This document shows, piece after piece, positions 12,843 to 61,759 of a stretch of 64,000 nucleotides of DNA. The position numbers were made by a program, and so were the translations under genes. Under the pieces are notes generated by a model. That model saw nothing but the letters and a program-made list of their open reading frames with translations, did no database searches and was not told the origin of the DNA. Location of the stretch: positions 124,001 to 188,000 of IMG/VR virus record IMGVR_UViG_3300036766_000988. The stretch is one strand, 5' to 3'. Each line of letters begins with the position of its first letter. Position 1 is the first letter of the stretch.

Positions 12843-12844
12843 GG

Positions 12845-18088: not shown

Positions 18089-18600
18089 GACTCGTCTCCG
18101 AGGTCGGGGAGGATGCCGGGATTTCGGCGTTCGATGGCCCGGATGGCGGCGGTGATGTCCTTGACCGTCGTGGCAGCGGGAGTCTTGGGAAGCGCTTCGT
18201 AGTAGGCCTTCATCTTGTCGAGGATGTACTCGACTGCGAGATCGACCCTGCCGTAGTTGACGGTGTGCCGACCCTTGTAGGCCTTATCGTTGTAGTCCTT
18301 GAGGGTCGGCGGGTTCATGAAGTGACCCTTGTGGACCCAGCAGTCGATGAAGATGCCGTCGGTGTTTCGGTGCTCCCCAAACGTGATGAGGAGACAGGTC
18401 TTGTCCGAGAAGCTCCGACGGACGTTCAAGCAGACGCCGCGCTCCCGACCGTTGTACCAGGGGGACGTCTCGATCTCGATCTTGTACGTACCAAGATCCT
18501 TGTCGTACTCGGCGAAGGCGGGCTCCCGACGCGAGAGCATCGCCAAGACCGCCAAGGCCTGGGGGTTGAGGTTGAAGGTGGGGTCGCCGATGGTGTTCAT
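18085..18600 (-). CDS. hypothetical protein
   Basis: 171 aa ORF coupled to the methyltransferase. Confidence 0.6.
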   Translation of the reverse strand: MNTIGDPTFNLNPQALAVLAMLSRREPAFAEYDKDLGTYKIEIETSPWYNGRERGVCLNVRRSFSDKTCLLITFGEHRNTDGIFIDCWVHKGHFMNPPTLKDYNDKAYKGRHTVNYGRVDLAVEYILDKMKAYYEALPKTPAATTVKDITAAIRAIERRNPGILPDLGDES

Positions 18601-18607
18601 GGTTGTG

Positions 18608-18970
18608 CTACGCCGGGCAGGTCTCTTCGATCAACCGGCGAAGATCGTCCGGCCGCATCGGTTTCAGGAACACCTTGGTGGCCCCACAGGCGGTCCCGAT
18701 TCGGAAGACCTCCATGTTCCCCGAAATGAGCACCACGGGGATCTCGGGGTATCGAGCCCGCACGATCTCACAGAACTCGTCGCCGTCCATCCTGGGCATT
18801 TCGAGGTCCGACAGGATGAGGTCCGGCCTGAAGCCCCCTTCGAGAAGCGGTAACGCCTCCCCAGGGCACATGCACAGGGTGGAGTCGCAGTTCAGCATCG
18901 AGAGCATCCGGCCGTACGCGGAACGTATCTGCCGATCGTCTTCGACGACGAGAACCTTGGGAGCTGCCAT
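18608..18970 (-). CDS. stand-alone response regulator receiver (CheY-like)
   Basis: VLVVEDD, DLILSDLEMPRMDG (phospho-Asp), VVLISG, FLKP. Confidence 0.9.
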   Translation of the reverse strand: MAAPKVLVVEDDRQIRSAYGRMLSMLNCDSTLCMCPGEALPLLEGGFRPDLILSDLEMPRMDGDEFCEIVRARYPEIPVVLISGNMEVFRIGTACGATKVFLKPMRPDDLRRLIEETCPA

Positions 18971-18995
18971 GGGGGCCTTCTTGGGGGTGAGGGGT

Positions 18996-19493
18996 TCAGG
19001 CGGTGTGGCGGGCGAAGTCGAGCTTCTTCGAGGTGAGCGCCGCCGCAGCCAGCTCGGCCGCGTTGGGGGCACCAGCCGCCACAGCTTCGAGGACGGCTTC
19101 GAAGAGCTTGTCTTCGAGCCCGTGGGCGGCATCGAAGTCGCCAGCACAGGCCATGATCTCGGCGACCTTCTGGGTCACGTCCTTGACCGTCAGGCTGAGA
19201 TGGGCGGCGAGGTACCACTGGCCCTTGTCGAACTTGATGAGCCCGCCCTTGCGGAGGCTCTGAAGGGCGCGGTCGACGACGCGCTCGACGGGCAGCCCGT
19301 GATCGCCATCGACGAAGCGGGTCGTGAAGCCGCACACCACGACGAAGTGGCCCGACGTGCGACCCTGGGTCGGGTTCTTGAGGTACTCCAAGATCTTCGT
19401 CTTGGTGGTCTCGACCGCGAGCTTCTCGGTGCTGCCTTCGGGGGTCTTCATGGGGGTCTCCTGGGGGACGTGAAAGACGGGGAGAGCCCCCAT
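18996..19493 (-). CDS. hypothetical two-domain phage protein
   Basis: Class A promoter upstream; C-terminal GDFDAAHGLEDKLF..VL.A.A pattern. Confidence 0.55.
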   Translation of the reverse strand: MGALPVFHVPQETPMKTPEGSTEKLAVETTKTKILEYLKNPTQGRTSGHFVVVCGFTTRFVDGDHGLPVERVVDRALQSLRKGGLIKFDKGQWYLAAHLSLTVKDVTQKVAEIMACAGDFDAAHGLEDKLFEAVLEAVAAGAPNAAELAAAALTSKKLDFARHTA

Positions 19494-19534
19494 CTAGCAG
19501 TACTACGCCGTGGGGGCCCTTGGTTCAGCAGCTT

Positions 19535-19876
19535 CTAGAAGCTGGGATCGCGGTAGGCCGAGTACTCGCCGAGCGAGAGGAAGCCGCTGCGCTTGTTGCC
19601 CTTCGAGACGTAACGGCCGTTCTTGCGGCGCGTGAAGACGCGGACGGCGCCCTCGGGGTCGGCGACGAACAGGTAGCGCTGCTGCTCCGAGAAGATCGAG
19701 CCCGATGCCAAGCGGCTCTTGGCATCGCGTGTGGTGACCTCGTGGCCGCTCTTCGAGACGGCGACGACCGTCACGGCGTAGCGGTCACTGCCGACCTGGT
19801 AGGAGGCGGGCAGCCCGACGACGGGGACGACGGGGGTTTCTTCGGACGAGAGATTCGAGGCGGTCGAGGTGGGCAT
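19535..19876 (-). CDS. hypothetical protein
   Basis: Class A promoter 6 nt before the ATG. Confidence 0.6.
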   Translation of the reverse strand: MPTSTASNLSSEETPVVPVVGLPASYQVGSDRYAVTVVAVSKSGHEVTTRDAKSRLASGSIFSEQQRYLFVADPEGAVRVFTRRKNGRYVSKGNKRSGFLSLGEYSAYRDPSF

Positions 19877-19905
19877 GAGGCTACTACGCTCCTTGAAGAT
19901 TTGGT

Positions 19906-20187
19906 TCAACCCTGGATCGGATCCCGCGTGTAGGTCGCCAGGATCTCGCCCGTCCGCTGGTCCTTGATTCGAGCCGTCAGGATGTGGGTCAGCCCGATGT
20001 GGCTGTTGACGCCCCCTGGGGAGGTCGAGGCCTCGTACCCAAGAGCGTACTTCTTGAGGTTCTCGGTCGTGGCCTTGCCGTCAGCCGGGATCAGGCCCCG
20101 CTTGCGCATCCTCCACTCGGAGGGAGTCCAGTGCCCACGATCCGTGGTGACCTCGACGACGAACGGGATGAGTCGGCTGTGTCCCAT
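19906..20187 (-). CDS. hypothetical protein
   Basis: Class A promoter 6 nt before the ATG. Confidence 0.6.
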   Translation of the reverse strand: MGHSRLIPFVVEVTTDRGHWTPSEWRMRKRGLIPADGKATTENLKKYALGYEASTSPGGVNSHIGLTHILTARIKDQRTGEILATYTRDPIQG

Positions 20188-20217
20188 GAAGTTACTACGC
20201 CGTCGATCCCTTTGGGT

Positions 20218-20517
20218 TCAGCCGAGAAGATGCAGCACTTCTCGGACGTCGCTGTCGGTCAGCCCACAGGACTCTCCCTCCGCGTCCGCCTTGCAGACGA
20301 AGAAAGTACCCACGATGTGGGTATCGCCGACCACCCGGTTGAACGGCAGCCGTTGGAGGAGCCCTTCCTCGTTGCAGAAGAGGTCGAACCGGCCCAGCCG
20401 GACCAGCTCGATCAAGCCGCCCACGACCGCCTGCATCCCTTCCAAGGACGACGGAATCTCCTGGATCATGGGAAATCCGCCCGGCTTGCAGATGACGACC
20501 TGCATGGTTTTCGGCAT
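20218..20517 (-). CDS. DUF3846 domain protein
   Basis: LEGMQAVVGGLIE...LFCNEEG...LPFNR...IVGTFFV. Confidence 0.75.
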   Translation of the reverse strand: MPKTMQVVICKPGGFPMIQEIPSSLEGMQAVVGGLIELVRLGRFDLFCNEEGLLQRLPFNRVVGDTHIVGTFFVCKADAEGESCGLTDSDVREVLHLLG

Positions 20518-20528
20518 GAAAGTCTCCC

Positions 20529-20735
20529 TCAGATCTTTCGGATGCGGTCCGGCGGACAGACGACCATCAGGGTGCGGCCGTTGTCCCACAGGACATCGAT
20601 TTGGGTGAAGTTGTCGCCGGGCCCGAGCCGCACAGGTTCGACGTGACGAACCGTGCCCTTGGTACCCGGCGCAATCGGATTGGGGTCGTCGCTCATGCGG
20701 ATCATCTCGATCCGGTCACCGGTGGCGAACATCAC
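20529..20735 (-). CDS. DUF4314 domain protein
   Basis: GDRIEMIRMSDDPNPIAPGTKGTV...QIDVLWDNGRTL. Confidence 0.75.
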   Translation of the reverse strand: MMFATGDRIEMIRMSDDPNPIAPGTKGTVRHVEPVRLGPGDNFTQIDVLWDNGRTLMVVCPPDRIRKI

Positions 20736-20946
20736 TCCGCCCCCATGTAGGTGTAGGCGAAGAGCGCACGACGAACCTCTGCCACAGCCGCCTTCTCCTC
20801 GTTCGCACGAGCCACCTTGTCCGCCGCCGGAGCGGGGACAACGACGAACCGGATGACGACAGGGGTAACAGGGGTGAGGACCATCGAAACCATACAGCTA
20901 CTACACCTCGGGATCCCTTAGTTCAGCCAGGATTCGTTCTTGGGTG

Positions 20947-21246
20947 TTACTTGATCAGCTCGACGAAGTCCTCGAAGTAGATGATGACCTCGTGCTTCCC
21001 TTCGGCGTGACCGTGCTCCCAGGCCAGCTCGAAACAGCGCTGTGCCTTCGGGTTTCCGGTGACCCCGTGCTCCTCGAAGAGATCTTGCTTGAATTGCTCG
21101 CGGAGCTGCTGCACCTCGTCCCGGTAGGCCTTCTTGAGGGCCTCTTCCTGGGCGTTGATCTTGGTGGGCCAGGGGCTCTTGGGGGCATAGCAGCCCTGCT
21201 TCAACCTCTCCAACACGGTACGGGTATCCACGATGGTTTTGGGCAT
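20947..21246 (-). CDS. hypothetical protein
   Basis: Class A promoter 6 nt before the ATG. Confidence 0.6.
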   Translation of the reverse strand: MPKTIVDTRTVLERLKQGCYAPKSPWPTKINAQEEALKKAYRDEVQQLREQFKQDLFEEHGVTGNPKAQRCFELAWEHGHAEGKHEVIIYFEDFVELIK

Positions 21247-21275
21247 GCTGCTACTACGCCGCCAAGAGGCTGCGT

Positions 21276-21608
21276 TCAGCGAGCTTCGGGAATGTCGTTG
21301 AGGTCTGCCTCGAACCAGTAGCCGCCCGTCCCCGCCCAGCGAACGCTCGGGTTCGTCAGGGGCACCTTGGTGACGATGAAGTGGTACGGAGGCTCCGTCG
21401 CCTGCTCGTGTTTGGTATCCGTCGAACCAGGGAGGATGTGGTCGACTTTGACCCGGTAGGTACGAGCGGCGACGCGATCCTTCATCTGGGGATGCGTCGT
21501 TCGAAGGTGCGTACCCTTCGGGATCGTCACCGTGTCGCCTCGCTTGACGGGCAGATCCGCGTCCTCGTGGAAGCCGACGTACTTCGGGGTGTTAACAGAA
21601 GGGGCCAT
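21276..21608 (-). CDS. hypothetical SH3-like protein
   Basis: 110 aa ORF; TACTAG variant motif 6 nt upstream. Confidence 0.55.
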   Translation of the reverse strand: MAPSVNTPKYVGFHEDADLPVKRGDTVTIPKGTHLRTTHPQMKDRVAARTYRVKVDHILPGSTDTKHEQATEPPYHFIVTKVPLTNPSVRWAGTGGYWFEADLNDIPEAR

Positions 21609-22086
21609 GAAAGTACTAGGGTGTTGTATATACTTGTTGAACCAAAAAACGACTCCGGAGCGGCTATTTTTATTCAGGGTCTAGGCATCAAGGTAGGAAA
21701 TCTCACTTGATTTGAGCCGGGTTCTAGGACTTAGACCGAATAGGTCACCCCGTTAGTTCTGGGTTATTATGAAAAACGGTTCCGGAGCGGGGATTTGATC
21801 TTGTCCCTAAGTACGACCTACTGATGCGTGCCCAGCTCGACGCCAGCCAGGAAGGCCCAGATGAGCTGCCACAGAGCCAGATCGGTGACTTCCTGGAAGT
21901 TCCCAAGCCAGGCATCGGCGAATCCATCCCGGCGACGAACCTGAAGGTCGTACCCACGCCCTCTTTGGATGAGGGTAAACGTCCAGCCTTCGACGACGAA
22001 CTTGGAAGTGCCGCCTTCCTGGTACCGGACCCAGAAGTCGTGAACCTCCGCAGGAACTGTTTCAGGCGTCAGCGTGGTCCTGGGCA

Positions 22087-22467
22087 TCAGGTGTCGAGCC
22101 CCCAGTAGATCTGGAAGGTCTCCAGCTCTTCGAGCAGCTCCACCAGCCGGGTGTTGAGCCTCACGGCCTTGCGGGCTTGGTCGAGACGCGAGAGGGTTGT
22201 GCCGCACTGGATGCGGAGATTCACGGGCAGCAGGTGCTGCTCCACGGACGAAATCTCCGCCCTGATGAGGGCCTCGTCGCGATGGGCCTGGGGGAGCTTG
22301 GCGAGCTGCACGCATTCGAGCCCCACGCACCAGATGGTACCCACGGGATGATCGTCGCGAACGACGAGCTGCTCGACCGTTGCGTCTTCGGCATCGACCG
22401 CGATGATTTTCCCCAGGGTCTTTTGCCCGTGGAGACGTCCAAACAGCACCCGATCACCCTTCAACAT
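22087..22467 (-). CDS. SH3/KOW-like domain protein, paralog of 23725..24174
   Basis: GDRVLFGRLHGQKTLGKII...VGTIW vs GDKVYFGRAHGEKTLGEVV...VGTIW. Confidence 0.6.
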   Translation of the reverse strand: MLKGDRVLFGRLHGQKTLGKIIAVDAEDATVEQLVVRDDHPVGTIWCVGLECVQLAKLPQAHRDEALIRAEISSVEQHLLPVNLRIQCGTTLSRLDQARKAVRLNTRLVELLEELETFQIYWGLDT

Positions 22468-22732
22468 GGCCTCTACCCTTACTTGGGGTCCCGCAGGATG
22501 GCCCCGAGATCTTGCATGGCCCCATCACCCGAGAGCCCGCTCTTGACGGGCTCCCACTCGTCGTAGAGGGCCTGGATGCGAGCGAGCTTCTGCTCGGCCT
22601 CAGCCAGCCGTTCCTTCGTGCCCTCGAAGCACGCCTCATCCGTGTGGGGCTCGGCCCACTGGCTCATCAAGACAAGGGCCTTGCAGTGCGGACAGAGGAC
22701 GAAGCCGGGGGGCAGCGGTTCAGCCATGGGGA

Positions 22733-23140
22733 TTATACCTTCCGGCGTTTCGAGACGGGTTTCTTGGGCATCGGGGGCGGGTTGCAGCCATCGCAGTCGA
22801 TGCTGAGCGCCCCCACGGGGTGGTCGGGATTGTCCGATGCGACCTCGGCGAACCAGAAGCGCCCGTGGGGGCACTGGTCACCCGCCTTCGTGGGAGGCGG
22901 CGGCTTGTAGTCGACGATGGGAAGCAGATCGAGGGCCATGTTCCACCGGATGATGTCCTGGGTCAGCGAGTTCGCGTTGTGGATCAGGTGGTTGTTGAGC
23001 GGCTTGCCCTCGGCGATTTCCTTGAGGGCAACCTCGACCTCATACGCCAGGCTGCGGAGCCCGTTCTCTAGATGGAGGCGGGCCGAGTCCTGCGCGATCG
23101 TGAGGCGGCTGTGGAGTAGACGCTTGGCTGTGGAGTCCAT
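22733..23140 (-). CDS. hypothetical protein
   Basis: Class A promoter 6 nt before the ATG at 23140. Confidence 0.6.
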   Translation of the reverse strand: MDSTAKRLLHSRLTIAQDSARLHLENGLRSLAYEVEVALKEIAEGKPLNNHLIHNANSLTQDIIRWNMALDLLPIVDYKPPPPTKAGDQCPHGRFWFAEVASDNPDHPVGALSIDCDGCNPPPMPKKPVSKRRKV

Positions 23141-23169
23141 GGCGGTACTACGTTGCCAGAAGCCAGGGT

Positions 23170-23679
23170 TCAGCGAGCGTTCAACTCTTCTTGGGTAGGT
23201 GGTAGGAGATACGGACGAAGCTCGTGTTTGTCGTGTCGCTTGATCCATTGACAGTTCATACAGAGGGTCTGGAATCCTACTGGAAACCCTTGCCGCACAA
23301 GCCATCGGTAGAAGTTGATGCCCCCAAGGGTTCGGCGATGATCCGCACCACCGCTGTCTACGTGGTCGATGGAGAGCGCACGCATGTCAGGGAAACCACA
23401 CCCAACGCATATGACTCCATAGTGCGCAAAGACCCTCTCTTTGGCGCGGTAGTACGAGCTTCGACACGCAACGAGATGCCTGTCGTGGTACCGCTCGCGT
23501 TCGGTCGCGTAATGACCTGTTTTGGCTTTACGAGCCGCCTGGCGACGCTTGTTGTGGCATGTCTTACACTCGGTTTGAAGGCGGTCCCTAGTGGTCCGGT
23601 GGGGATGAAACTCGCTTACAGCGATTGGGCCCCGTTCTGGACCACACATAGCGCATCGTTTCAGTCGTTCTTCACTCAT
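23170..23679 (-). CDS. HNH endonuclease with N-terminal Zn finger
   Basis: CAMC...ECKTC; YGVICVGCGF...LSIDHV...QTLCMNCQWIK. Confidence 0.78.
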   Translation of the reverse strand: MSEERLKRCAMCGPERGPIAVSEFHPHRTTRDRLQTECKTCHNKRRQAARKAKTGHYATERERYHDRHLVACRSSYYRAKERVFAHYGVICVGCGFPDMRALSIDHVDSGGADHRRTLGGINFYRWLVRQGFPVGFQTLCMNCQWIKRHDKHELRPYLLPPTQEELNAR

Positions 23680-23724
23680 GCTTTACGTTCGCCATCGAAA
23701 AACTATTCGATGGCGAACGGGTGT

Positions 23725-24174
23725 TCAGAACGAGCCAGCAAGCCGGTATGCCTCTTCCTCGTCCACCCGACGGCCAATCTCGACGAACAATGTGTTGAGC
23801 TTGGCACGAAGAGCGACCCCATGACGACGAGCAGCCGAGGCTGAGATTTCCCCATCCTGGTGTAAATTCTCGGGACTGAGGTGGCTGTAGACCCCCAGGA
23901 TGTCCTTCAGGATGGCAGCCTCGGGCCTGCGGACCGCCGGGGCCTGAGGAGCCTGCGGGAGGCTCTTGGGCTCGCTGGGGACCGACACGGCACCCGTCAC
24001 CGGGCTCACGAGCGAGAGAGCCACGCGCCAGATGGTGCCCACCGCGAAGTTCTTCATGGTGCCGCGGCTTTCGAGCTGCTTCACCTTGACGGACTTGCCG
24101 TTGACCTTGACCACCTCGCCCAGAGTCTTCTCACCGTGGGCGCGACCGAAGTAGACTTTGTCGCCACGTACCAT
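23725..24174 (-). CDS. SH3/KOW-like domain protein
   Basis: Class A promoter; N-terminal domain shared with 22087..22467. Confidence 0.65.
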   Translation of the reverse strand: MVRGDKVYFGRAHGEKTLGEVVKVNGKSVKVKQLESRGTMKNFAVGTIWRVALSLVSPVTGAVSVPSEPKSLPQAPQAPAVRRPEAAILKDILGVYSHLSPENLHQDGEISASAARRHGVALRAKLNTLFVEIGRRVDEEEAYRLAGSF

Positions 24175-24592
24175 GTAGCTACTACGCCCGTGCCAGCCTC
24201 AGTTCAGCAAGTTTTCGGACAGCGCCCCAGAGCTGTTCCCAGCGAATCTGTGATGTGCTACCCCCAACTTGGGCGAGTAGCTCAGAACCGATTCAGAAGC
24301 GCCGCGTCCAGGAAGCGCAGACGAATTGGGTCACGAGCAGCGGGCTGATAACCCGTCAGGACGCTGGTAGTCGTGACCAGCCTCGTCCTTTTGAACTAGG
24401 GAACAACCCGATGAGGAGCCTCGTCGGGACAATCCCGATCCCAGAGCTTCACGTACTCACGAGCTTCCTTGCGAGTTGCACCGGCTTCGAACTTCTTGCC
24501 CGTGTTGTCCCGCACGTACCACCAGGGCTTCTTGGGGGTCTTGGTCGGCTTCTTGGGCTTCATCCAGCTACTACGCTGGCAGGAGTCCCAGC

Positions 24593-25306
24593 TCAGTCTG
24601 AAGTCCACCAAGCCGAACGAGCGGCCAATTTGACCTTGATCCGGTCGGCCTGCTCCTGGCCTTCCTGCCAGCGCGTCGGGTTGTTCTTCCGCTGGCTGTC
24701 ACAACCAGCCCAGGTCTCGGCAGCGCCCGCACAGGCGGCCTCGAAGGGCATCCCGCTCTTGAGACTGCGGAGGAAGTCCAGAGCCGAAGCCACGCAACCT
24801 CCGGCTCCTGGCACAGCGGTCGCCCCAAGAGCAGCGGCCCAGTTGGACTCCGTGATCGCAAACGCGTCCTCGAAGGTGCGGTAGGTCTCGACGATGCAGT
24901 ACGCGATCGTCACTGGATGGCCGGGGTAGACCGCGAACTCGCCGAGGATGTCCAGGTCGTGCCGGGTATCCTCCCCAGGGTAACGGGGCAGCCTCATGCG
25001 GATGTTGCGAGGAAGCTTCCCCGCCACATCGTAGGTGTCCATGGTGCCCGTGCGGTCGTAGCAGTACCAGCCGTGCAGCTCCGAAGAGTACTCGCTGTCG
25101 TGCTGCCGCCCGTAGAGCTTCGTCAGGCTGTTCGCCGTGTTGATGGCGTCCGCTCGGTTGAGCCAGAGCCGCAGGACGTAGTTTCCCCGAGTCACCCGCA
25201 CTTCCTGGGGCGGTCCCTTGGGAATATCCCGCACCGGCACACGCTTCTTGGCTGCCTTCTTGGGGGTCTTGGCTGCCTTCTTGGATGCGGGGCTCCCGGT
25301 CTTCAT
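24593..25306 (-). CDS. hypothetical protein with Lys-rich N-terminus
   Basis: Class A promoter 7 nt before the ATG; 237 aa. Confidence 0.6.
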   Translation of the reverse strand: MKTGSPASKKAAKTPKKAAKKRVPVRDIPKGPPQEVRVTRGNYVLRLWLNRADAINTANSLTKLYGRQHDSEYSSELHGWYCYDRTGTMDTYDVAGKLPRNIRMRLPRYPGEDTRHDLDILGEFAVYPGHPVTIAYCIVETYRTFEDAFAITESNWAAALGATAVPGAGGCVASALDFLRSLKSGMPFEAACAGAAETWAGCDSQRKNNPTRWQEGQEQADRIKVKLAARSAWWTSD

Positions 25307-25341
25307 GGTGGGTACTACACCTCAGAGGCCCCTGGTTCAGC

Positions 25342-25818
25342 CTACTTGCGTTCGTAAGGCTGGTAGCAGAACAGGCACGAGTCCATGGCGGGGTCGTTCT
25401 CCTGATCGTAACAGCAGTACGTCGTGGGGCTCTTGGGACATTCGTGAACGTGCTCGATCCACAAGTCCTTGGAGTCGAGAGTCCCCTCCGGAGCCCATTC
25501 GGAGTTGTAGATGCCCGTCACGATGCCCCGCAGCAGATCCTGTTGAACCCCGATCTCCTCCATGATCTCGGAGATCTTCTCCCGCATGCCGTCCATTGCG
25601 TTCAGGACCCCAGCAACCCTAGGGTCCGGTTCACGCGGGATGGGCTTCGGGTTCTTTTCCTGACGAGCCTTGTTGCGGCGAGCGTACTGGATGTCGCGAC
25701 AGGGCTTGCATCGAACGATCTGGTGGGTGCGCTTCTTCCTCGCGTGCTCTTCCTGCTCGGCCGCCGTCCAACAGAAGGGTTTTTGACAGTCCCGACAGGT
25801 GAGGTTGAGATCTTCCAT
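25342..25818 (-). CDS. zinc-ribbon (CxxC...CxxC) domain protein
   Basis: LTCRDCQKPFCWTAAEQ...RCKPCR, second Cys/His cluster at the C-terminus. Confidence 0.6.
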   Translation of the reverse strand: MEDLNLTCRDCQKPFCWTAAEQEEHARKKRTHQIVRCKPCRDIQYARRNKARQEKNPKPIPREPDPRVAGVLNAMDGMREKISEIMEEIGVQQDLLRGIVTGIYNSEWAPEGTLDSKDLWIEHVHECPKSPTTYCCYDQENDPAMDSCLFCYQPYERK

Positions 25819-25820
25819 GG

Positions 25821-28800
25821 TTACTCGGCGAGGATCCTGTCCCAAGCAGTTCTGGGCGGAGCTTTGTAGACGTAGATGAGCAGCACCCGCTGGTTGATCT
25901 CCTTGCCCAAAAGATTGTGGCGGATCCAACAGCTCTTCTTGTTGACCTTCGTGACTACGCCGAAACGCCGTCGTCCGTAGGCGTACGGGTAGAACGAAAC
26001 CCGCACCCCCACAGCGAGCCAGAGCAAGTCCATGGCTCAGTCGTGCGTTCCGATGTGCATGGTGCCGTGCTCGGGACAGGTGAACGAGTACATGCAGACG
26101 CAGGGAGAAGGCGTCGCCTTCGAGCAACAGGCGTGCTGCCGGATGTGTTCTTTGCGGCGGCACTCGTCCGAGCAGAGCTGCTGCTCGAAGCGCTTCACCG
26201 CCCACCGGAAAACCTCGTCCGCCACGGGTTGGCCGCAGCAGCGGCACGTGCCGTACTCCTGCATCGCCCTGACAAGCCAGAAGAAGCTCCTGTTCTCCGC
26301 CCGATACTCACCCCTGAACAGGTACTGGTAGGTGGCCAGGTCCGAACGGAGCTTCTTCACGTCGCCTTCGAGCATGCTGAGAAGAAGCAGCACCCGCTCG
26401 TGCATCTCCCCCTTCTTGATCTGCACGGTGACGCGCTTCGGCTTGCTGGAACGCTTCTTGGGAGTGGGCTTCTTGGGGGTCATGGTCTTCCTAGACATTA
26501 CACCTCTACTCCTCGTGTCAGCCGTTACCAGCTTGAGACGGCCCAGTTGAGCAGCGCACGGAGCTTCTCGGGAGCCACCAACACACGGTCACCGCCGTAG
26601 ACCTGAATCGCAAGATGAAGCCCCGACCTGGGAGCATTCACCGTGGTCCGGTACACGAACACTGTCGGGGACTCGCCCAGGAGGTCGTAGGTGGCGTCCG
26701 GCTTCTCCCACCAGAGAAGTAGGCGCTCCACGAGCGCCACGGGTAGCCTGACGTGGTGATGATCGACAGCGATGTGCAGCACCTTCTCGTCCGTCCCCCA
26801 CTCGATGGAGGCCGACTCGCCGGTCTCGAAACAGCAGGCCGAGCCCAAAGGCTGCTGGATCTCGGGGGTCCCCACCGGCTTCGGAGCCGTGTACCCACCC
26901 AAAATCGTGTGGTTGAGGTCGTTCATGACAGTACTACGCCTCCAAAAGTAGGAGTTCAGCTAGGGAACGCCGCCGCCCGCTCCAAGAGCTGGAGAGCTTC
27001 CTCGCATTCGGCCGCCTTCGCCAGCAAAAGCTGGTCAACCTTGCTGCCGACCCCACGAGGAGCCGCTTCGCGGTAGATCTTGGCGTAGCTGCGGAGTAGG
27101 TCCAACGCAGCGTTGGGGCGAACGACGGGGGCAGCAACGGGCTTGGTGTCCATGAGGGTACTACGCCGCCACTTCTTGGGATTCAGCCCGACTTCTTGCG
27201 CTCCCCAGGGAAGTGCCAGCTATCGAGGAGCTTCTGAGGCACCGGCTGGTCGCCAAACATCCGAAGGATCTCGGCCCTGGCCCGGTGACACCGAGCCTCC
27301 TCCCGGTAATACGCCTGACGCTCCCAGTCGGAGAAGATGGCAGCCGCTTCGGCACAGGTCTTGGGTAGGGACGGAGTGCCCATCAGGTGGCCTCTTGAGG
27401 GTTGGGGAGGTTGCTCACGATGTGCGAGACCAACCAGTCGGCCGCGTCGTACATCCCGAGCCGGGACGCCACGAGCCGCAAATCCTCCAACTGGTCGTTC
27501 AGCGAATCCTGACGTTGCGATTGCCGAGGCAGAGCGCGGACAAGAGCGAGAAAGTCTTCGCGGGCCATTTACGCCGCCTTCCTGAGCGCATGGTAGCGCT
27601 GCTGGATCTGGCCGTTCCGGTGCGTCATGCGGGGACTCACCGACCCCAACATGTCGAGCAGGTCTTCACGGGGCCAGCTCCGTAGCTCGGGGAACTCGGC
27701 AAGTAGACGATCGAGGGCGGTGTCCATGAAACTACTACGCCGCCTGGAAGCCCGGTTCAGCGGGCCTTCGCGAGCTTGACGAAGAGCTTGAGCGCCTCGT
27801 CGAACGGAAGGGTGTTGAGAACCACCATCTGGGGATCGAACGGGACAGAGTGTCCGGGCAGGTTCGCCTGGAAAAGCTTTCCGTCACGAACGAAGACGAG
27901 CTTCTTCTTGAAGAGCCTCTTGAGGTCGCGCTCCGCCAGCCAGGTGTCCAGAAGCTCACCGAAAAGAAGCTCGGGGGACTGGGGGAGCGGCCCGAAGGCG
28001 TGATCGACCGGAGGCAGCGTCTTGCAGTAGACCCTGATCTCGTCGGCAAGACTTCCAGGACGAATCAGGTCCGCCCCACCGTGACCGTCGTTCTCGACCG
28101 TCCCGCGCTTCACCCCATCAACCCAGACATCCGCTGCAAAAGCAGACGTCTCGTGGGAAAGTCGCGCGTTGTAGGAGATGCGACGAAGTTCGATCTTCAT
28201 AGGGGTACTACGTCTTGGGTACTGCCGGTTCAGCCAAAATGTTGACCAGTAACGTAGGGTCGCCCGCCTGGGTCCGATGATGCCTGTACTCCCCCGCAGC
28301 CACGGAACGCGTCGAGCCAGACTCCTGCCACCCACAACAGCAGATGGCCGTCCAGCAACGTTCCGCAAGCGACCGCTCGCCGTTTGATTCCAGCGACACC
28401 AACCGGTGCTTCACGCGATGGCCTGAGCCCAGAGGTCGAGCTTGAGTACCAGATCCAAGGTCGCCTGCTCGAACGTGTCCCCCGAGCCCGTGATGTTCGA
28501 CGCTTTGCAGCGGCTCCCACGAAGCTTCACCGGAATACTCATTGTGCAGCCCCAGGCGGCTCACCCGGAACTCGGGCTCACCCAACGGGCCAGGCACCGG
28601 CAGAAGCCGAGGATGAAGACGTACGGCTTCCTCGATCTTGAGGAACAGCGGTTCCAGTTCAGCAGCGGTGGCCATGCAGCTACTACGTCACCATGACCCA
28701 CAGTTCAGCTCGTCCAGCAAGGGTGGAATCCCTACCGCCGGGCGGACAACCAGATGAGGCCGACCGCCAGAAGCCCCACCAGCAAGAGCCCGAAGTCGAC

Positions 28801-45344: not shown

Positions 45345-45363
45345 CCCCGGTGTAGAGTCTTTC

Positions 45364-45800: not shown

Positions 45801-46343
45801 ATGACACTCGACGATTTCAACCGGACTACGCTCCAAGAGTTCCCTGGCTTCAAGCTCGTCTACAAGGAAGAGAGCTTGCTGATGCGCTTTCTGGCGAAGC
45901 TCCTGTGGATCGTGACGTTCGGCCAACAGAAGCTCTTCATGACCCACTTCACCACCACGGTGGGCCAGACGATCTACGTCCCCCTCGGGTGGGATCTGAA
46001 GAATCCTCTCCAACAGCTCCAAGTCTTGCGGCACGAACGCATCCACATGAGGCAGGCAGCCCGCTTGACCTTCCCGCTCTTCATGTTCCTCTACTTGGTG
46101 CCTTTCTTCCCCCTCGGGCTCGCCTACGGGAGGGCCCGGCTCGAATGGGAGGCCTACACAGAGTCGATGCGGGCCATCCGTGATCAGTACGGGGATGAGG
46201 CGCTTCACGATGCCCGGTTCCGGCAGAGCATCGTAGACATGTTCACCACGGGTCAGTACGGCTGGATGTGGCCGTTCCCCACCACGGTCGACCGCTGGTA
46301 CACCGAGACCATGATGCTGATCCTGGCCGAGCCCAAGGGATGA
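45801..46343 (+). CDS. putative zincin-like (HExxH) membrane-associated protein
   Basis: VLRHERIHMRQ, hydrophobic stretch, distal LEWEAY. Confidence 0.6.
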   Translation: MTLDDFNRTTLQEFPGFKLVYKEESLLMRFLAKLLWIVTFGQQKLFMTHFTTTVGQTIYVPLGWDLKNPLQQLQVLRHERIHMRQAARLTFPLFMFLYLVPFFPLGLAYGRARLEWEAYTESMRAIRDQYGDEALHDARFRQSIVDMFTTGQYGWMWPFPTTVDRWYTETMMLILAEPKG

Positions 46344-46344: not shown

Positions 46345-46410
46345 GCCCGCCTAGTTTAAGCTCCCGGCGGACAGAGAACAGGTTCTGGTGGGGCTCACTC
46401 CCAAGAACCC
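46345..46410 (-). repeat. structured ~65 nt dispersed element, copy A
   Basis: GCCCGCCTAGTTTA...CCCGGCGG...GAGAACAG...GCTCAC shared with 56886 and 57361. Confidence 0.8.
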
Positions 46411-46538
46411 TTCTAATCAAGTTGATAACAGCGAGCTTTTGCCCTCAACTTCTAAAAGGACTGTCCCAACATCGGTCCGTCATGAGACCTAGAAGGGCCA
46501 ATCGAGGACTTGACCAGCCGTCAGAGGCGAGCCCAGAT

Positions 46539-46560
46539 CTCTACACCGGCCGGTGTAGAG
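46539..46560. promoter_or_regulatory. 22 bp perfect palindrome made of two back-to-back GGTGTAG motifs
   Basis: CTCTACACCGGCCGGTGTAGAG; ATG at 46568 lies 11 nt from the plus-strand motif. Confidence 0.75.
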
Positions 46561-48950: not shown

Positions 48951-49527
48951 TCATGAACGCGATCCATCCCAACTCCTACTGGCTCGATGGTACAGTGCAT
49001 CAGTTCGTCGAGAAGCCCACGGTCGTTGACGCAAATGCTTCGACCGCAATCGAGGTCACGAAGGACGAAGCGGAGTCCGTCAACAAGGCCTCCGAACAGG
49101 ACAATTGCCAACCAATGGCGACCGACGCCGAGCAATCCCGGTGGGCCCGAGATACCGCCCGTAAGGAGCATGCTGCTTCCGAGATCGGTCGTCGGAAGCT
49201 CGCCAGGAAACGTCAGCTCGCCAAGGCCGCCCGCAAGGCCCGTAAGGAGAACCGTCGATGAATCACGCCGCTGTCTTCAAGGAAATCGAGATCGAACGTG
49301 AGAAACAAGACCGTATCTGGGGTGGTCAGGACCACGACCGTATTCACACGAGTCACGACTGGATCTCGTACCTCACGAAGCACGTCGGCCGTGCAGTACA
49401 CTGGCCGTGGACGCCCGAGCGTTTTCGGCAGCAGATGATTGTCGTGGCAGCCCTGGCGGTGGCGGCAATCGACTGGTGTGACACGAAGACAGCAACGGTC
49501 GCCAAGCCCTCGGTGTAGAGGCCCCCG

Positions 49528-56114: not shown

Positions 56115-56570
56115 ATGCCCTCAGCTCTCTCATGCTTTCGAGTCGACACCCTGGTGTTGGCCGAGTCCAGGCCTTGGTACGCAATGGAACAAGGCAGCTT
56201 GGTTGTCGTCGCGCTCGACGGGCAAAACCTAGCTACTTGTCGTATCAGCTCGAATCGAGTGCTGATCCCCATGTGGGAGGTCGGGGATGTGGAGCTGGTA
56301 GCGGGGGAGCTGCTCTACTGCGCCGGATTACAGCAAGGAGTCCGGCGCGCAACGGCCAAGCAAGCGGCTCTAGGGCACCGTCAAGTCCTCACTCATCAAG
56401 ACCATCCAGCGATCCCTCTCGGGATGGCGTTGGGTCTCGATTCACCGGAATATGTAGGAATCCACGTGGTGCGCGGTTCCCAGAAGGGGCTCGTGGTCTT
56501 CCCCGAGGGGGGTGATAACGGCAGGACTGTCGTGCTTTACGATGGTCACGACATGAACGAGTCTGACTGA
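56115..56570 (+). CDS. hypothetical protein
   Basis: GGTGTA motif 10 nt before the ATG. Confidence 0.55.
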   Translation: MPSALSCFRVDTLVLAESRPWYAMEQGSLVVVALDGQNLATCRISSNRVLIPMWEVGDVELVAGELLYCAGLQQGVRRATAKQAALGHRQVLTHQDHPAIPLGMALGLDSPEYVGIHVVRGSQKGLVVFPEGGDNGRTVVLYDGHDMNESD

Positions 56571-56572: not shown

Positions 56573-56875
56573 CTAGACGGCGGGCCGCTGCACCCGAGCC
56601 CAACAGGTCTGGGCTCGACGGGCTTCGATACGTTCTTGGTAGAAGCCGATGCTCTTTTGGAGCTTCACCACGTGCTGCCTGAGCAAGGCCCGGATGTGGT
56701 AGTTGCATCCGAGTTGGGTCCTCAGTCGACGTCGAGTCGACCCTCGATGAAGCTTGCTGGCCGAGGCCTCTTGTCGGGAGATCCGCTGTTCGAGGTCGCG
56801 GAGTTCGTTCGAGCGCTTCCGCAACAGATCGTGCGCAGCGTTGAGCTTCTGCTCCCAGAACGTGAGATCTCGCAT
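56573..56875 (-). CDS. 100 aa coiled-coil protein, paralog 1
   Basis: MRDLTFWEQKL...FYQERIE..R..CW. Confidence 0.7.
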   Translation of the reverse strand: MRDLTFWEQKLNAAHDLLRKRSNELRDLEQRISRQEASASKLHRGSTRRRLRTQLGCNYHIRALLRQHVVKLQKSIGFYQERIEARRAQTCWARVQRPAV

Positions 56876-56885
56876 CGGAGTTGAA

Positions 56886-56950
56886 GCCCGCCTAGTTTAG
56901 CGTTCCCGGCGGGCAAGAGAACAGGGCCGATGTCCCGCTCACCAGCACCC
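56886..56950 (-). repeat. structured dispersed element, copy B
   Basis: Same conserved blocks as 46345; ends ~10 nt before the ATG at 56875. Confidence 0.8.
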
Positions 56951-57047
56951 ACGTATTTTAGGCAACCGACCGTCTGGTTCAGCCAAGGAGGCCTTTATCC
57001 TGACGGAGGCGGCGGGCGTAGTTTCTCTACACCAGTCGGGCAGGCCG

Positions 57048-57350
57048 CTACAACATCGGCCGCTGGATCACGTTCCAACAGCTCCGTCGCATCCGGGTTT
57101 CGATGCGCTCTTGGTAGAACACAGCCTGCTGCTCAAGACGTGCGATCTCACGCCGCTGCCGGGCCCGCATGCGGTACGCCACGACGAGCTGCGCCCGTAA
57201 CCGACGCTTCTCCGAACCCTTCGGAAGCTTGAGTGCGGCAGCCTCATGACGTTGAATGACGTTGTGAAGGGTTTTCTGGTTTTCGTGAAACCGCTTCAAG
57301 CGACCCTGACAGTCCTTGAGCTTCTGCTCCCAGAAGGTGCGGTCTCGCAT
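57048..57350 (-). CDS. 100 aa coiled-coil protein, paralog 2
   Basis: MRDRTFWEQKL...FYQERIE..R..CW. Confidence 0.7.
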   Translation of the reverse strand: MRDRTFWEQKLKDCQGRLKRFHENQKTLHNVIQRHEAAALKLPKGSEKRRLRAQLVVAYRMRARQRREIARLEQQAVFYQERIETRMRRSCWNVIQRPML

Positions 57351-57360
57351 GGTAGTAGGG

Positions 57361-57423
57361 GCCCGCCTAGTTTACGGTTCCCAGCGGGCGGAGAACAGAT
57401 GCTTGTGCCCCGCTCACAAGCGA
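57361..57423 (-). repeat. structured dispersed element, copy C
   Basis: Same conserved blocks; ends ~10 nt before the ATG at 57350. Confidence 0.8.
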
Positions 57424-58214
57424 TCCCAACAATAGCGGCTCCCGATGTCCAGGTCGGCCCCCGATACCCTTCCACAAGAGATGTCTTGCCAAATGATGGG
57501 GTAAGACAATTTGCACCGAGGCATCAGAAAGCTTCCCCGACCACCAGTGGCGGGCATCTCTTCTCTACACCGGTTGTCCGAGAAACCCTACGAAGGACGG
57601 GCTCAATTTGGTTTGTTCAAGGTCTCGAAAGTAACCGGTTGTCCATCCCATACTTTCGGAATGTGCCTCTGCTCATCGAACAGAAGTACAGAGCGCACGA
57701 CGTGGATTCCTGAGCGGGAATCCACACTTATCCTTGTCCACTTCCAGTCTCGGGGGATGATCTTCATGAGATAGCGTAACAAGCGTGCGGCAGAGGATCC
57801 CGTAAGTTTCACCGCCATCAACCCTTCCTTGGGTATCTGAGCCTGATGTGCCTCAGCACCCCCAACCAGTAGGTGGTGGTGAGCCGCCCGCTGGCCGAAC
57901 TCTCGTGGTACAATCCCCCATCGTCGGGGTCGAAGTGGATCCAGTCCCCGTGGTCGACGGGCAGCCGATGCTCCCGCACACCAGACATCCCATGGGGTCT
58001 GCGAAGGCTGCGGGCAGCTTCCAGTCTGGACATCGGCATGGGGCTCCTTGCTCACCGGTAGGGCGTTGGGGGCTGGGGTCTCAAGACCGCTTCGAGGATA
58101 GCGCGGAAATCAGCCGTCTCTCGGATGTAGGTGATCGCCAAGCGAAGCTCGTCCACGGACAAGCTCATAAAGCCGCCTTGCTTCGCTTTCCAGTAGAGTT
58201 CTTCGCGATGGGAT

Positions 58215-58445: not shown

Positions 58446-58516
58446 GAAAGTCTCTACACCAACGGCGTCAGATGGCTTTGGGTGCCAGTCCTAAACCTCT
58501 TATCCAGCATGTCAGC

Positions 58517-60135: not shown

Positions 60136-61008
60136 TTAGGCGGCAACCCGGCGCTCATCCAGGTAGCCCACGGCACTTTCAAGGGTTTGAAGCCCCTCCC
60201 GTGAGTGCCCGAGCCCGAGGTTGCAGGAACGGCAGAGGAGCCCCCGCAGACCGGCCTTCTTGCCGACCGTGTGATCGTGGTCGATGTGGGTGCCTGCCCC
60301 TGGCTTCAACGGGTCACGACAGATGCCGCAGGCCCCACCCTGACGGTCGAGCAGCACCTGGAAGGACTCCAGCGTGAGCCCGTAGCCGTACCAGAGGTTG
60401 GAGACTCGGGTACCGGTCTTCTCGGCCCCCTGCGGCCTCTCGGCAGGGATGGGTAACCCCACCACGAATCCTTGGCTGAGGTAGACGAGGGCGTTCTTGA
60501 GCAGCGCAGGATCATCTCGGAAGTGTCCGAGCATCACGTTGCACAGACCGCAAAGCAGCCCCCGTACCTTCCCGGTCGTGTGGTCGTGGTCGAGATGTGT
60601 TCCGGTGCGGCCTGGCTTCAAGAGGTCGGAACAGACGGCGCACTTCCCATCCTGCTTCTCGAACAGAGCTTGCTTGTCCTCGGGGGTGAGGCCGTACCGA
60701 CAGAGAAGCTGCCAGGCCCGTACTTTTTCAGGGTTCTTGGTTTGGTAAGCAAATACCCGGGCTTTTTCACCTTCGGGGTTTGCGGCATAGCGAGCGGCGT
60801 CCTTGGCTTTCAAGTGCTCAGCATTCGAGGCAGCCCAGTTCACCCAAGTCTCGGGGTGCTTTGCTCTGTAGGCCGTTTGCTTCTCGGCGCAGCACTTCTT
60901 GCAGTGGCTCTTGAGCCCATCCTTGGCGACTTTGGATCGTCCGAACGGGCCAGGCCCTTCGCAATTTGAACAAGTCTTCTTGGGTACTACCAACTCGGAA
61001 TCACCCAT
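60136..61008 (-). CDS. endonuclease VII-like (His-Me finger) protein with two tandem nuclease domains
   Basis: YGLT...Q.GKCAVC...LDHDH.TGKVRGLLC..CN..LG twice; N-terminal CSNC...HCKKC. Confidence 0.88.
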   Translation of the reverse strand: MGDSELVVPKKTCSNCEGPGPFGRSKVAKDGLKSHCKKCCAEKQTAYRAKHPETWVNWAASNAEHLKAKDAARYAANPEGEKARVFAYQTKNPEKVRAWQLLCRYGLTPEDKQALFEKQDGKCAVCSDLLKPGRTGTHLDHDHTTGKVRGLLCGLCNVMLGHFRDDPALLKNALVYLSQGFVVGLPIPAERPQGAEKTGTRVSNLWYGYGLTLESFQVLLDRQGGACGICRDPLKPGAGTHIDHDHTVGKKAGLRGLLCRSCNLGLGHSREGLQTLESAVGYLDERRVAA

Positions 61009-61118: not shown

Positions 61119-61745
61119 CTATACGCACTCATCTCCGCCACGATTGGCCCATTGCGGCAACTTAACCTCGCGAAGAATGTTGAACTTTTTGCCGCCTGAG
61201 AGTGCTGAGAAGACCTTGTGGTAGGGCTCGAACTTCGGGTCACGGGCGGAGGCCTCTTTGAGCACCTTGACGGCCTTGAAGAAGCGATGCCGAACGCGTC
61301 CCTGGGTGAGCTTGAGCTGATTGGCGACTTCGCTTTGGCATGTTGTCTTCCACATGCCGACCAGGATTGAGACGTCGATTGGCTTGAAGATGTCAGGTAG
61401 GTCGCGCCGGATGTCCTCTTCCTGGATTTGGGGGATCGATAGGAGGAACTTGATCCTCTTGAGCCCACGGTCGAGTCGATAGCTGATGGCCGCTTGGGTC
61501 ACGTTGAAGATGACTGCGATGTCGGCCTGACGCTTCTTTTCGACGAAGTAGAGGTAGATGAGGTCTGCTTCCCGTTGGGGAATCCGGTCGAGTAGAGGAG
61601 CAATGCGCTCTTCGTAACTCATCCCGCCGGATAGGAGGGACTGGACCTCTTCGGTATCGTCGTCCTCCTCGGCGTCCTGATCGGGAACTTGGAAGCGGTT
61701 CGAAAGCTGTGCAGGATCGATAGGGATGACATACCCAGTGCTCAT
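61119..61745 (-). CDS. protein with two tandem sigma70 region-4-like HTH domains
   Basis: LLDRIPQREADLIYLYFVEKKRQADIAVIFNVTQAAISYRL and CQSEVANQLKLTQGRVRHRF. Confidence 0.7.
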   Translation of the reverse strand: MSTGYVIPIDPAQLSNRFQVPDQDAEEDDDTEEVQSLLSGGMSYEERIAPLLDRIPQREADLIYLYFVEKKRQADIAVIFNVTQAAISYRLDRGLKRIKFLLSIPQIQEEDIRRDLPDIFKPIDVSILVGMWKTTCQSEVANQLKLTQGRVRHRFFKAVKVLKEASARDPKFEPYHKVFSALSGGKKFNILREVKLPQWANRGGDECV

Positions 61746-61759
61746 CGTGCCCTCCATCG

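What the first reader, a model, noticed from the sequence alone, without database searches (positions are those of the whole stretch)
46345..46410. Three-copy ~65 nt element with conserved hairpin + pseudoknot potential: candidate new cis-regulatory RNA or ribozyme
Seen: copies at 46345..46410, 56886..56950 and 57361..57423, all in the same orientation. Minus-strand consensus: variable stem around GTGAGC (GCTTGTG/CACAAGC in C, GCTGGTG/CATCGGC in B, GGTTCT/AGAACC in A: different sequence, pairing kept), then CTGTTCTC, then G(C/T)CCGC(C/T)-GGGA(A/G)C-NN-TAAACTA-GGCGGGC. GTTCTC can pair with GGGAAC/GGGAGC in the loop of the second stem (H-type pseudoknot; the A-to-G change stays a wobble). In B and C the loop GCGGG could alternatively pair with CCCGC, a switch-like option. 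Each copy lies downstream of a minus-strand GGTGTAG motif (46541..46546 region, ~57025, ~57565); B and C end about 10 nt before paralogous ATGs, while A has no gene behind it and faces the 3' end of the HExxH gene. I could not match it to a riboswitch or ribozyme family I know.
Basis: partly seen in the sequence, partly recalled or inferred. Interest (0 to 1): 0.75.

Follow-up and report, generated by a model that had tools for sequence, protein, structure and literature searches.

The report
New pseudoknot leader RNA in huge phage
The three repeats are real copies of a previously undescribed folded RNA (a hairpin plus a pseudoknot) that sits just before the start codon of a small, very basic protein in a few giant phages and most likely controls how much of that protein is made.

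Summary
Three same-strand copies (minus strand, 46345-46409, 56886-56950, 57361-57425) are the only ones in the 252 kb virus record.

They are more than a duplication remnant. A profile of the two downstream 100-aa paralogs found three remote homologues in unrelated metagenome contigs. A covariance model built only from the window's copies hits immediately upstream of each homologue, ending 8-11 nt before the start codon.

Across the six copies, hairpin P1 and stem S2 change sequence but keep pairing. Non-Watson-Crick cells are 7 G.U against 1 C.A, which points to sense-strand RNA. The crossing stem S1 pairs in all six copies, but with thin covariation.

Rfam has no match, even at E<=10.

It normally sits 6-7 nt before an ATG (leaderless mRNAs), so these are rare leadered transcripts.

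The protein is a helical hairpin of pI about 11 with no known family.

Best reading: a new cis-regulatory leader RNA acting on translation initiation, probably operated by its own protein. A riboswitch is not excluded. There is no support for a ribozyme or for the proposed switch pairing. Copy A is an intact, promoter-driven orphan.

The parts
46539..46547 (-). Copy A: promoter-like -10 element GGTGTAGAG. It is half of a perfect back-to-back palindrome (46539-46560) whose other half drives the + strand gene starting at 46568.
   Evidence: The same palindrome heads the leader in L023.
46526..46534 (-). Copy A: 5' box GGGCUCGCC at the predicted 5' end of the transcript. It is complementary to A's own P1 loop/3' arm and to S2b.
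   Evidence: cognate duplex -21.9 kcal/mol; 8% of shuffles as good.
46381..46409 (-). Copy A: hairpin P1 (GGUUCU+UGGG / CCCA+AGAACC, loop AGUGAGC).
   Evidence: -13.2 kcal/mol.
46345..46379 (-). Copy A: H-type pseudoknot. S1a 46374-46379, S2a 46366-46372, S1b 46360-46365, L3 46352-46359, S2b 46345-46351. No ORF follows; it abuts the stop codon of the convergent gene 45801-46343.
57025..57033 (-). Copy B: promoter-like GGTGTAGAG, 15 nt after the stop codon of gene C.
57011..57017 (-). Copy B: 5' box GCCCGCC (same heptamer as S2a).
56924..56950 (-). Copy B: hairpin P1 (loop AGCGGGA; two G.U pairs).
56886..56922 (-). Copy B: pseudoknot. S1a 56917-56922, S2a 56908-56914, S1b 56902-56907, L3 56893-56901, S2b 56886-56892. 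A 10-nt pyrimidine-rich spacer follows (56876-56885).
56573..56875 (-). Gene B: 100-aa basic helical-hairpin protein.
57563..57571 (-). Copy C: promoter-like GGTGTAGAG.
57549..57555 (-). Copy C: 5' box GCCCGCC.
57398..57425 (-). Copy C: hairpin P1 (loop AGCGGGG).
57361..57396 (-). Copy C: pseudoknot. S1a 57391-57396, S2a 57383-57389, S1b 57377-57382, L3 57368-57376, S2b 57361-57367. A 10-nt spacer follows (57351-57360).
57048..57350 (-). Gene C: 100-aa basic helical-hairpin protein, paralog of B.

Best explanation
The repeats are the 3' domain of a conserved, structured 5' leader RNA. Reading 5' to 3' on the gene's strand, the leader has:
- a -10-like promoter element, then a C-rich 5' box;
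- a variable stretch of 50-170 nt;
- hairpin P1, whose loop is conserved (GAGYGGGA);
- one linker nucleotide, then a canonical H-type pseudoknot: S1 of 6 bp, L1 of 1-4 nt, S2 of 6-7 bp with no junction nucleotide, and an A-rich L3 of 8-9 nt containing AAACUA;
- 8-11 pyrimidine-rich nucleotides, then the start codon of a ~100-aa arginine-rich helical-hairpin protein.

Proposed mechanism (inferred). The genome shows no Shine-Dalgarno signal and most of its mRNAs look leaderless. The folded pseudoknot would occupy the part of the mRNA that a 30S subunit must hold just upstream of the AUG. A bound factor that stabilises it would shut off initiation. The most likely factor is the encoded basic protein itself (autogenous feedback), perhaps as a dimer reading the CGGGA(A)C sequence that occurs in both the P1 loop and the S2 loop.

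Copy A keeps promoter, 5' box, P1 and pseudoknot intact but has no ORF. It would be a promoter-driven non-coding version that binds the same factor (decoy or sink).

Shown: the repeat; its conservation in other contigs; pairing with covariation; its strand; its fixed position before the start codon; its exclusive association with this protein family.

Inferred: transcription from the GGTGTAGAG element; action on translation; the identity of the effector.
For: 1. Homology. R1 was built from the window's three copies only. It hits directly upstream of all three remote homologues of the gene: L022 47 bits, L023 44 bits, L024 16 bits (57 bits with R2). All hits are on the sense strand and end 8-11 nt before the start codon.
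2. Structure. 97% of cells are paired over P1, S1 and S2, and 7 pairs change on both sides. None of 500 shuffles reached the observed value on any of the five measures, and slid controls pair at 36-48%. In L024, S2 is GGCGUC/GACGCC instead of GCCCGCC/GGCGGGC, and S1 is (U)CUCCU/GGGAG(G) instead of GUUCUC/GGGAAC.
3. Strand. There are 7 G.U cells against 1 C.A. All three substitutions in S2 are C-to-U in the C-rich arm.
4. Selection. The core is about 90% identical between B and C, while their coding sequences are 55% identical.
5. Leader context. GGTGTAGAG ends 5-8 nt before an ATG in 11 of 19 exact occurrences. That is the signature of leaderless genes (PMC3160421). There is no SD enrichment. 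These transcripts are therefore exceptional in having 140-205 nt leaders.
6. Protein. pI is 10.4-11.5 with 23-31 Arg+Lys per 100 residues. The model shows two long helices at pLDDT 89.
7. Co-occurrence. All 5 known genes of the family carry the element. The element was found nowhere else apart from orphan copy A.
Against: - No expression data exist for any copy; no RNA run was listed.
- The protein fold is a generic coiled-coil hairpin, and no RNA-binding family was matched.
- S1 covariation rests on one lineage (L024) in a pyrimidine/purine-rich context where pairing is easy. The model-fitted alignment counts no both-side change in S1.
- MFE folding of single copies does not single out the proposed fold (z-scores -0.2 to -1.95). 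Alternative pairings with the 5' box exist.
- Only six copies from four lineages are known.
- Copy A has nothing to regulate in cis.
Confidence: 0.45

Rival explanations
1. It is a riboswitch. The pseudoknot with the P1 loop forms an aptamer for a small molecule, ion or nucleotide second messenger. Ligand binding stabilises the pseudoknot and blocks (or frees) the ribosome landing site.
For: The size and topology are those of pseudoknot riboswitches (established knowledge: SAM-II, preQ1-II/III, fluoride, guanidine-III). Unpaired positions are invariant (L3 AAACUA, CGGGA, P1 loop). The 3' strand ends 8-11 nt before the AUG. An orphan copy is tolerated, as with some riboswitch-derived sRNAs.
Against: No Rfam aptamer matches, even at E<=10. 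The only regulated gene is one family of small basic structural-looking proteins, with no enzyme or transporter to hint at a ligand.
Confidence: 0.17
2. It acts on transcription. Either it is an attenuator or terminator (P1 followed by the U-rich GUUCUCU, or S2 followed by a U tract), with the 5' box acting as anti-terminator. Or it is a processive antitermination RNA of the lambda nut / HK022 put kind.
For: A lenient scan flags P1 plus its U-rich tail as terminator-like in B and C. S2 is followed by U4-U6 in L022, L023 and L024. The 5' box can pair with P1 better than shuffles in A, C and L023. The protein is small and Arg-rich like lambda N (own knowledge).
Against: The tails are poor U tracts in the window's copies, and the S2 loop is 15 nt. 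A terminator at P1 would not explain the stronger conservation of the pseudoknot downstream of it. In the window there is no operon to antiterminate: gene B is followed at 2 nt by a convergent gene and A by nothing.
Confidence: 0.12
3. It is a constitutive structural element with no effector: a 5' stabiliser, a processing site or a ribosome standby/enhancer structure for an SD-less internal start.
For: The genome lacks SD motifs. The spacer after the pseudoknot is pyrimidine/U-rich, and an A/U-rich single-stranded stretch precedes P1.
Against: Sequence-level invariance of loops across proteins only 29-45% identical goes beyond what a generic stabiliser needs. The orphan copy A with its own promoter is hard to explain.
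Confidence: 0.12
4. It is a DNA-level site. GCCCGCC heptamers (the 5' box at the promoter plus an inverted pair before the ATG) would be operators for a DNA-binding repressor, or the hairpins would be recombination or origin structures.
For: The heptamer occurs just downstream of the -10 element and again as an inverted repeat. Copy A lies beside the replication operon.
Against: Asymmetric mismatches argue against it: 7 G.U against 1 C.A, and all S2 changes are C-to-U in one arm only. The P1 stems differ completely between copies while keeping pairing. L024 changes S2 without a matching 5' box.
Confidence: 0.05
5. It is a self-cleaving ribozyme.
For: It is a compact pseudoknotted fold with invariant unpaired nucleotides.
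Against: There is no similarity to any ribozyme family in Rfam at E<=10. Its fixed position directly before a start codon fits a translational operator better.
Confidence: 0.03

Closest known systems
Translational operator of phage T4/RB69 gene 32 (pseudoknot-nucleated autogenous repression; PMC535899, PMC3014915)
   Same: It is a phage mRNA leader with an H-type pseudoknot 5' of the initiation region. The gene product is a nucleic-acid-binding protein that would repress its own translation.
   Different: The T4 operator needs a >40-nt unstructured UUAAA-rich tract between pseudoknot and AUG for cooperative gp32 binding; here the spacer is 8-11 nt. The protein here is a helical hairpin, not an OB-fold SSB. 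An extra hairpin P1 and a 5' box are conserved. No sequence similarity.
Ribosomal-protein leaders with pseudoknots (E. coli rpsO/S15, alpha-operon/S4; own knowledge)
   Same: A pseudoknot overlaps or abuts the ribosome-binding region and is stabilised by the encoded basic protein. RNA and gene co-occur strictly.
   Different: There is no relation to ribosomal proteins (Pfam/NCBIfam negative) and no SD in the structure. It is phage-borne, duplicated in tandem, and has an orphan promoter-driven copy.
Pseudoknot riboswitches (SAM-II/V, preQ1-II/III, fluoride, guanidine-III; own knowledge, all in Rfam)
   Same: An H-type pseudoknot of about 40 nt whose 3' strand lies next to the start codon, with an A-rich loop able to line the S1 minor groove.
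   Different: No covariance-model match. No metabolic gene association. An additional conserved hairpin is stacked 1 nt upstream.
Lambda nut / HK022 put leader RNAs with small Arg-rich N proteins (own knowledge)
   Same: A structured RNA about 100 nt downstream of a phage promoter, upstream of a ~100-aa Arg-rich protein gene, with a further copy behind another promoter.
   Different: There is no downstream operon or terminators to overcome in the window. The pyrimidine tract pairs into a pseudoknot instead of acting as boxA. The predicted protein is folded, not disordered.

Membership tests
Any Rfam 15 family (riboswitches, ribozymes, leaders, frameshift elements) | Covariance-model score at or near the family's gathering threshold | tested here: not met
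   No hit in the window at gathering thresholds. With permissive filters at E<=10 on the loci holding all three copies, no hit overlaps an element.
H-type RNA pseudoknot (structural class) | Two stems with crossing topology, both supported by conserved or compensated pairing | tested here: met
   S2: 100% of cells paired, with 2 (alignment) to 3 (manual) pairs changed on both sides. S1: 100% paired, with 3 one-sided changes; the manual parse of L024 adds 1-2 compensated pairs. S1 support is modest.
H-type RNA pseudoknot (structural class) | Sterically permissible loops (short L1 over the S2 deep groove, 0-1 nt junction, L3 long enough to cross S1) | tested here: met
   L1 is 1-4 nt, the junction is 0 nt, and L3 is 8-9 nt and A-rich, in all six copies.
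T4 gene 32-type translational operator | Pseudoknot followed by a >40-nt unstructured tract with UUAAA/UAAA repeats that includes the RBS (PMC535899) | tested here: not met
   Only 8-11 nt separate the pseudoknot from the start codon, with no UUAAA repeats.
T4 gene 32-type translational operator | The regulated gene encodes the ssDNA-binding protein that binds the operator | tested here: not met
   The protein is a two-helix hairpin with no Pfam, PHROG or NCBIfam match. Binding is not testable here.
Riboswitch | Specific ligand binding by the aptamer with a change in the expression platform | not testable with these tools
   It needs in-line probing or reporter assays. The only indirect test is negative: the proposed alternative helix (P1 loop with S2a) is not kept in L024.
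Intrinsic (Rho-independent) terminator | GC-rich stem with a short loop, immediately followed by a U tract | tested here: inconclusive
   P1 with its GUUCUCU tail passes a lenient scan in B and C but not in A. S2 has a 15-nt loop, and a clear U tract follows it in only 3 of 6 copies.
Lambda nut / HK022 put antitermination RNA | Lies in an operon leader upstream of terminators and distal genes whose expression depends on it | tested here: not met
   Units B and C are monocistronic and end against a convergent gene. A has no downstream gene.
Type III toxin-antitoxin RNA (ToxI-like) | Tandem array of short pseudoknot repeats upstream of an endoribonuclease toxin | tested here: not met
   There is a single copy per gene. 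The protein is a helical hairpin with no ToxN-like match.
Leaderless-type promoter (-10-like element about 10 nt before the start codon; PMC3160421) | TA-containing motif at a fixed short distance upstream of many start codons | tested here: met
   GGTGTAGAG (<=1 mismatch) ends mostly 6-7 nt before the start of 31 predicted genes. 11 of 19 exact copies precede an ATG by 5-8 nt. This concerns the motif upstream of the element, not the element itself.

The most novel reading that the evidence does not exclude
The leader is a new riboswitch class carried by huge phages. The hairpin-plus-pseudoknot aptamer would sense a host or defence-derived small molecule (for example a nucleotide second messenger) and set the level of a small basic effector protein. 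Copy A would be a free-standing sensor RNA next to the replication operon.
Probability: 0.12. Interest if true: 0.85.

Novelty: new member of a known kind. Interest (0 to 1): 0.6.

Why it matters
Structured regulatory RNAs of huge phages are almost unexplored. This one has a compact, testable architecture and comparative support from four lineages. It is linked one-to-one with an uncharacterised family of arginine-rich helical-hairpin proteins, so it gives that family a probable ligand (RNA) and a simple assay. The genome otherwise appears to run on leaderless mRNAs from two promoter classes. The exception therefore marks genes that need post-transcriptional control. The intact orphan copy suggests an RNA decoy or sensor layer. 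If the effector proves to be a small molecule, this would be a new riboswitch class.

Tried and rejected
- Exact-pattern scans for the core found no true homologue: viral contigs, metagenome contigs and genome contigs. The early patterns required the T before AAAC and so would have missed L022/L023-type copies.
- One genome hit looked hairpin-like (Hymenobacter, L016 3155-3241). It scores only 16 bits and its downstream ORF is unrelated, so it was rejected as chance.
- Close-relative protein searches found nothing beyond the five proteins.
- The nearest phage by DNA polymerase (LR745208.1, 34% identity) has neither the RNA nor the protein.
- An upstream ORF or read-through was considered. TGA in P1 and TAA in L3 are in frame with the gene in B and C. 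L023 has an open frame through the leader, and C has a possible leaderless 47-codon uORF. Neither the ATG nor the peptide is conserved, so this was rejected.
- A long-range helix enclosing the variable middle of the leader is plausible in B, L022 and L023 but not in A or C. It remains unresolved.
- Fold and profile searches for the protein gave only generic coiled coils.
- SD mimicry by AGGCGGG was rejected, because L024 lacks it and the genome shows no SD signal.

Full report
**Setting**

The window is bases 124001-188000 of a 252 kb IMG/VR virus record from a sediment metagenome. The record is about 60% G+C and CheckV rates it 53% complete, so it is probably half of a huge phage. The element lies beside the replication module: SNF2 helicase, DnaB-like helicase, primase-like protein and family A DNA polymerase on the + strand. 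The nearest GenBank phage by polymerase is the 485 kb uncultured phage LR745208.1, at 34% identity.

**The observation**

The three copies are real, lie on the minus strand and are non-random.
- The invariant 14-mer occurs 3 times against 0.13 expected.
- Nothing else in the 252 kb record resembles the element.

B and C each end 10 nt before the ATG of tandem 100-aa paralogs that share 45% identity. A ends 2 nt from the stop codon of the convergent HExxH gene and has no ORF behind it.

B and C are about 90% identical in the 38-nt core. Their coding regions are 55% identical (43% at third positions), and the leader upstream of P1 is largely unalignable. The core is therefore held by selection and is not simply young.

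**The upstream motif**

GGTGTAGAG is not specific to the element.
- With at most one mismatch it ends mostly 6-7 nt before the start codon of 31 predicted genes.
- 11 of its 19 exact occurrences precede an ATG by 5-8 nt.

A TA-containing motif at that distance is the recognised signature of leaderless genes, the motif being the -10 element (PMC3160421).

A second class, CTGAAC-N15-18-(C)GTAGTA, sits 4-7 nt before an ATG in 17 of its 21 occurrences. It heads about 30 further genes, has an ECF-sigma look, and occurs 12 times in the window against 0.01 expected. A sigma-like gene lies at 61119-61757. No Shine-Dalgarno enrichment is seen upstream of genes.

On this reading A, B and C are rare transcripts that start just after a promoter but carry leaders of about 140-205 nt. 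This is inference from sequence. No RNA run was listed for the region.

**Homologues**

The word-indexed protein search found only the two paralogs. The exhaustive profile search with the two paralogs found three proteins of the same length:
- P0003, E = 1e-15.
- P0005, E = 1e-8.
- P0010, E = 3e-4.

Their contigs come from three different sources (ENA, JGI, Logan). Model R1 was built only from the window's copies. It hits directly upstream of each gene on the sense strand (47, 44 and 16 bits; 76, 70 and 57 bits after rebuilding as R2). Each hit ends 8-11 nt before the start codon.

L023 also keeps the back-to-back promoter palindrome seen at copy A, followed by a GCCCGCC box. L024 shares two further genes with the window's genome. 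The element and the protein family therefore travel together in a small lineage of phages. All five genes carry the element, and the element was found nowhere else except as orphan A.

**Structure**

On the model-fitted six-sequence alignment (P1 and S2 alone):
- 97% of cells in P1, S1 and S2 form standard pairs.
- Seven pairs change on both sides.
- No shuffle of 500 reaches the observed value on any of the five measures.
- Sliding the partners by 1-3 columns drops pairing to 36-48%.

Stem by stem:
- P1 carries most of the covariation, with 5 of its 7 pairs changing on both sides.
- S2 is invariant or wobble-compatible in five copies and is rewritten in L024 (GGCGUC/GACGCC).
- S1 pairs in all 36 cells of my manual parse. 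In L024 it reads (U)CUCCU/GGGAG(G), which gives one clear U-A to C-G exchange and a possible second. The fitted alignment splits that strand and so counts none. I therefore rate S1 as consistent but only modestly supported.

Loop lengths are those of a canonical H-type pseudoknot with an A-rich L3.

Non-Watson-Crick cells are 7 G.U against 1 C.A. All three S2 substitutions are C-to-U in the C-rich arm, as expected for RNA of the gene's strand and not for a DNA palindrome.

Single-sequence folding is not decisive (z-scores -0.2 to -1.95).

The P1-loop GCGGG can pair with CCCGC of S2a in B, C and L023. In L024, S2a changes and the loop does not, so that helix is not conserved.

Two other regularities emerged and remain unexplained:
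- The P1 loop resembles S1b in every copy and changes with it: CGGGAC with CGGGAAC, GUGAGC with GGGAGC in A, GGGAGC with GGGAGG in L024.
- The 5' box at the start of the leader is a copy of S2a. It can pair with S2b, or with P1, better than shuffles in A, C and L023.

Either a dimeric factor reads two similar loops, or the leader has alternative folds. I cannot tell which.

**The protein**

- It has 100 residues, pI 10.4-11.5 and 23-31 Arg+Lys.
- AlphaFold predicts two long antiparallel helices at pLDDT 89.
- Foldseek, PDB profiles, Pfam, PHROGs, NCBIfam and the ESM Atlas give only generic coiled-coil hairpins.

The composition fits a nucleic-acid binder (Rev-, Rop- or N-like by analogy, from my own knowledge), but nothing shows this.

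**Mechanism**

I commit to a cis-acting translational operator. A pseudoknot parked 8-11 nt upstream of an SD-less start would obstruct or trap the 30S subunit when stabilised, most probably by the encoded protein (confidence 0.45 for the whole chain).

On the separate links in that chain:
- That it is a functional sense-strand structured RNA I hold at about 0.85.
- That it regulates the adjacent gene I hold at about 0.7.

Rivals are a riboswitch (0.17), a transcription-level device (0.12), a constitutive structural element (0.12), a DNA site (0.05) and a ribozyme (0.03).

Copy A is intact in every conserved part, so it is not a decaying relic. A decoy or free-standing sensor RNA is my best guess. 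A role as a barrier against the convergent gene is possible.

**Comparison and novelty**

The element works most like the T4 gene 32 operator and the S15-type pseudoknot leaders, but it fails their defining features (spacer tract, protein family). It matches no Rfam family. I file it as a new family of a known kind, the structured 5' leader or translational operator.

Noticed in passing
Whole record; in the window e.g. 45349-45357(+), 46552-46560(+), 49512-49520(+), 58452-58460(-): GGTGTAGAG is a promoter-like -10 element that ends 6-7 nt before the ATG of about 30 genes. This implies widespread leaderless mRNAs. No Shine-Dalgarno enrichment is seen upstream of genes.
   Followed up: partly
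Window 11904-28708 minus strand (12 exact sites), and elsewhere in the record: A second, bipartite promoter class: CTGAAC, 15-18 nt, (C)GTAGTA, then 4-7 nt to the ATG (17 of its 21 occurrences). It resembles ECF-sigma promoters and heads about 30 small genes in a block (12 sites in the window against 0.01 expected).
   Followed up: partly
Window 61119-61757 (-): A phage gene with Sigma70 region 4 matches. It is a candidate for the factor that reads one of the two promoter classes.
   Followed up: no
Window 46539-46560; L023 1028-1043: A perfect palindrome of two back-to-back -10-like elements (CTCTACACCGGCCGGTGTAGAG) between copy A and the replication operon. The core TACACCGGCCGGTGTA is conserved in the unrelated contig L023, where the divergent gene is PemK-like.
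   Followed up: partly
Window 57549-57555, 57011-57017, 46526-46534 (-); L023 1052-1058: A C-rich box (GCCCGCC; GGGCUCGCC in A) sits right at the predicted 5' end of each leader. It is identical to the 5' arm of S2 and complementary to S2b and to the P1 loop. A's variant matches A's own variant loop.
   Followed up: partly
Window 57414-57556 (-): In copy C only, an ATG 5 nt after the promoter element opens a 47-codon frame that stops at the TGA in the P1 loop. It is not conserved in the other copies.
   Followed up: yes
Window 56570/56573: Gene B (-) and the + strand gene 56115-56570 converge with only 2 nt between their stop codons and no terminator hairpin.
   Followed up: no
Window 60136-61008 (-): A 290-aa protein with two endonuclease VII domain matches.
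   Followed up: no
L018 (LR745208.1 285080-289930): The closest phage DNA polymerase aligns in four separate pieces over 4.9 kb, which suggests inserts (inteins or introns) in that relative's gene.
   Followed up: no
L016 3155-3241 (Hymenobacter sp. contig): An intergenic hairpin CGCCGCC...GGGAGCGUAAACUA...GGCGGCG superficially resembles S2 with its loop. The model score is weak and the neighbouring gene is unrelated, so it is probably chance.
   Followed up: yes
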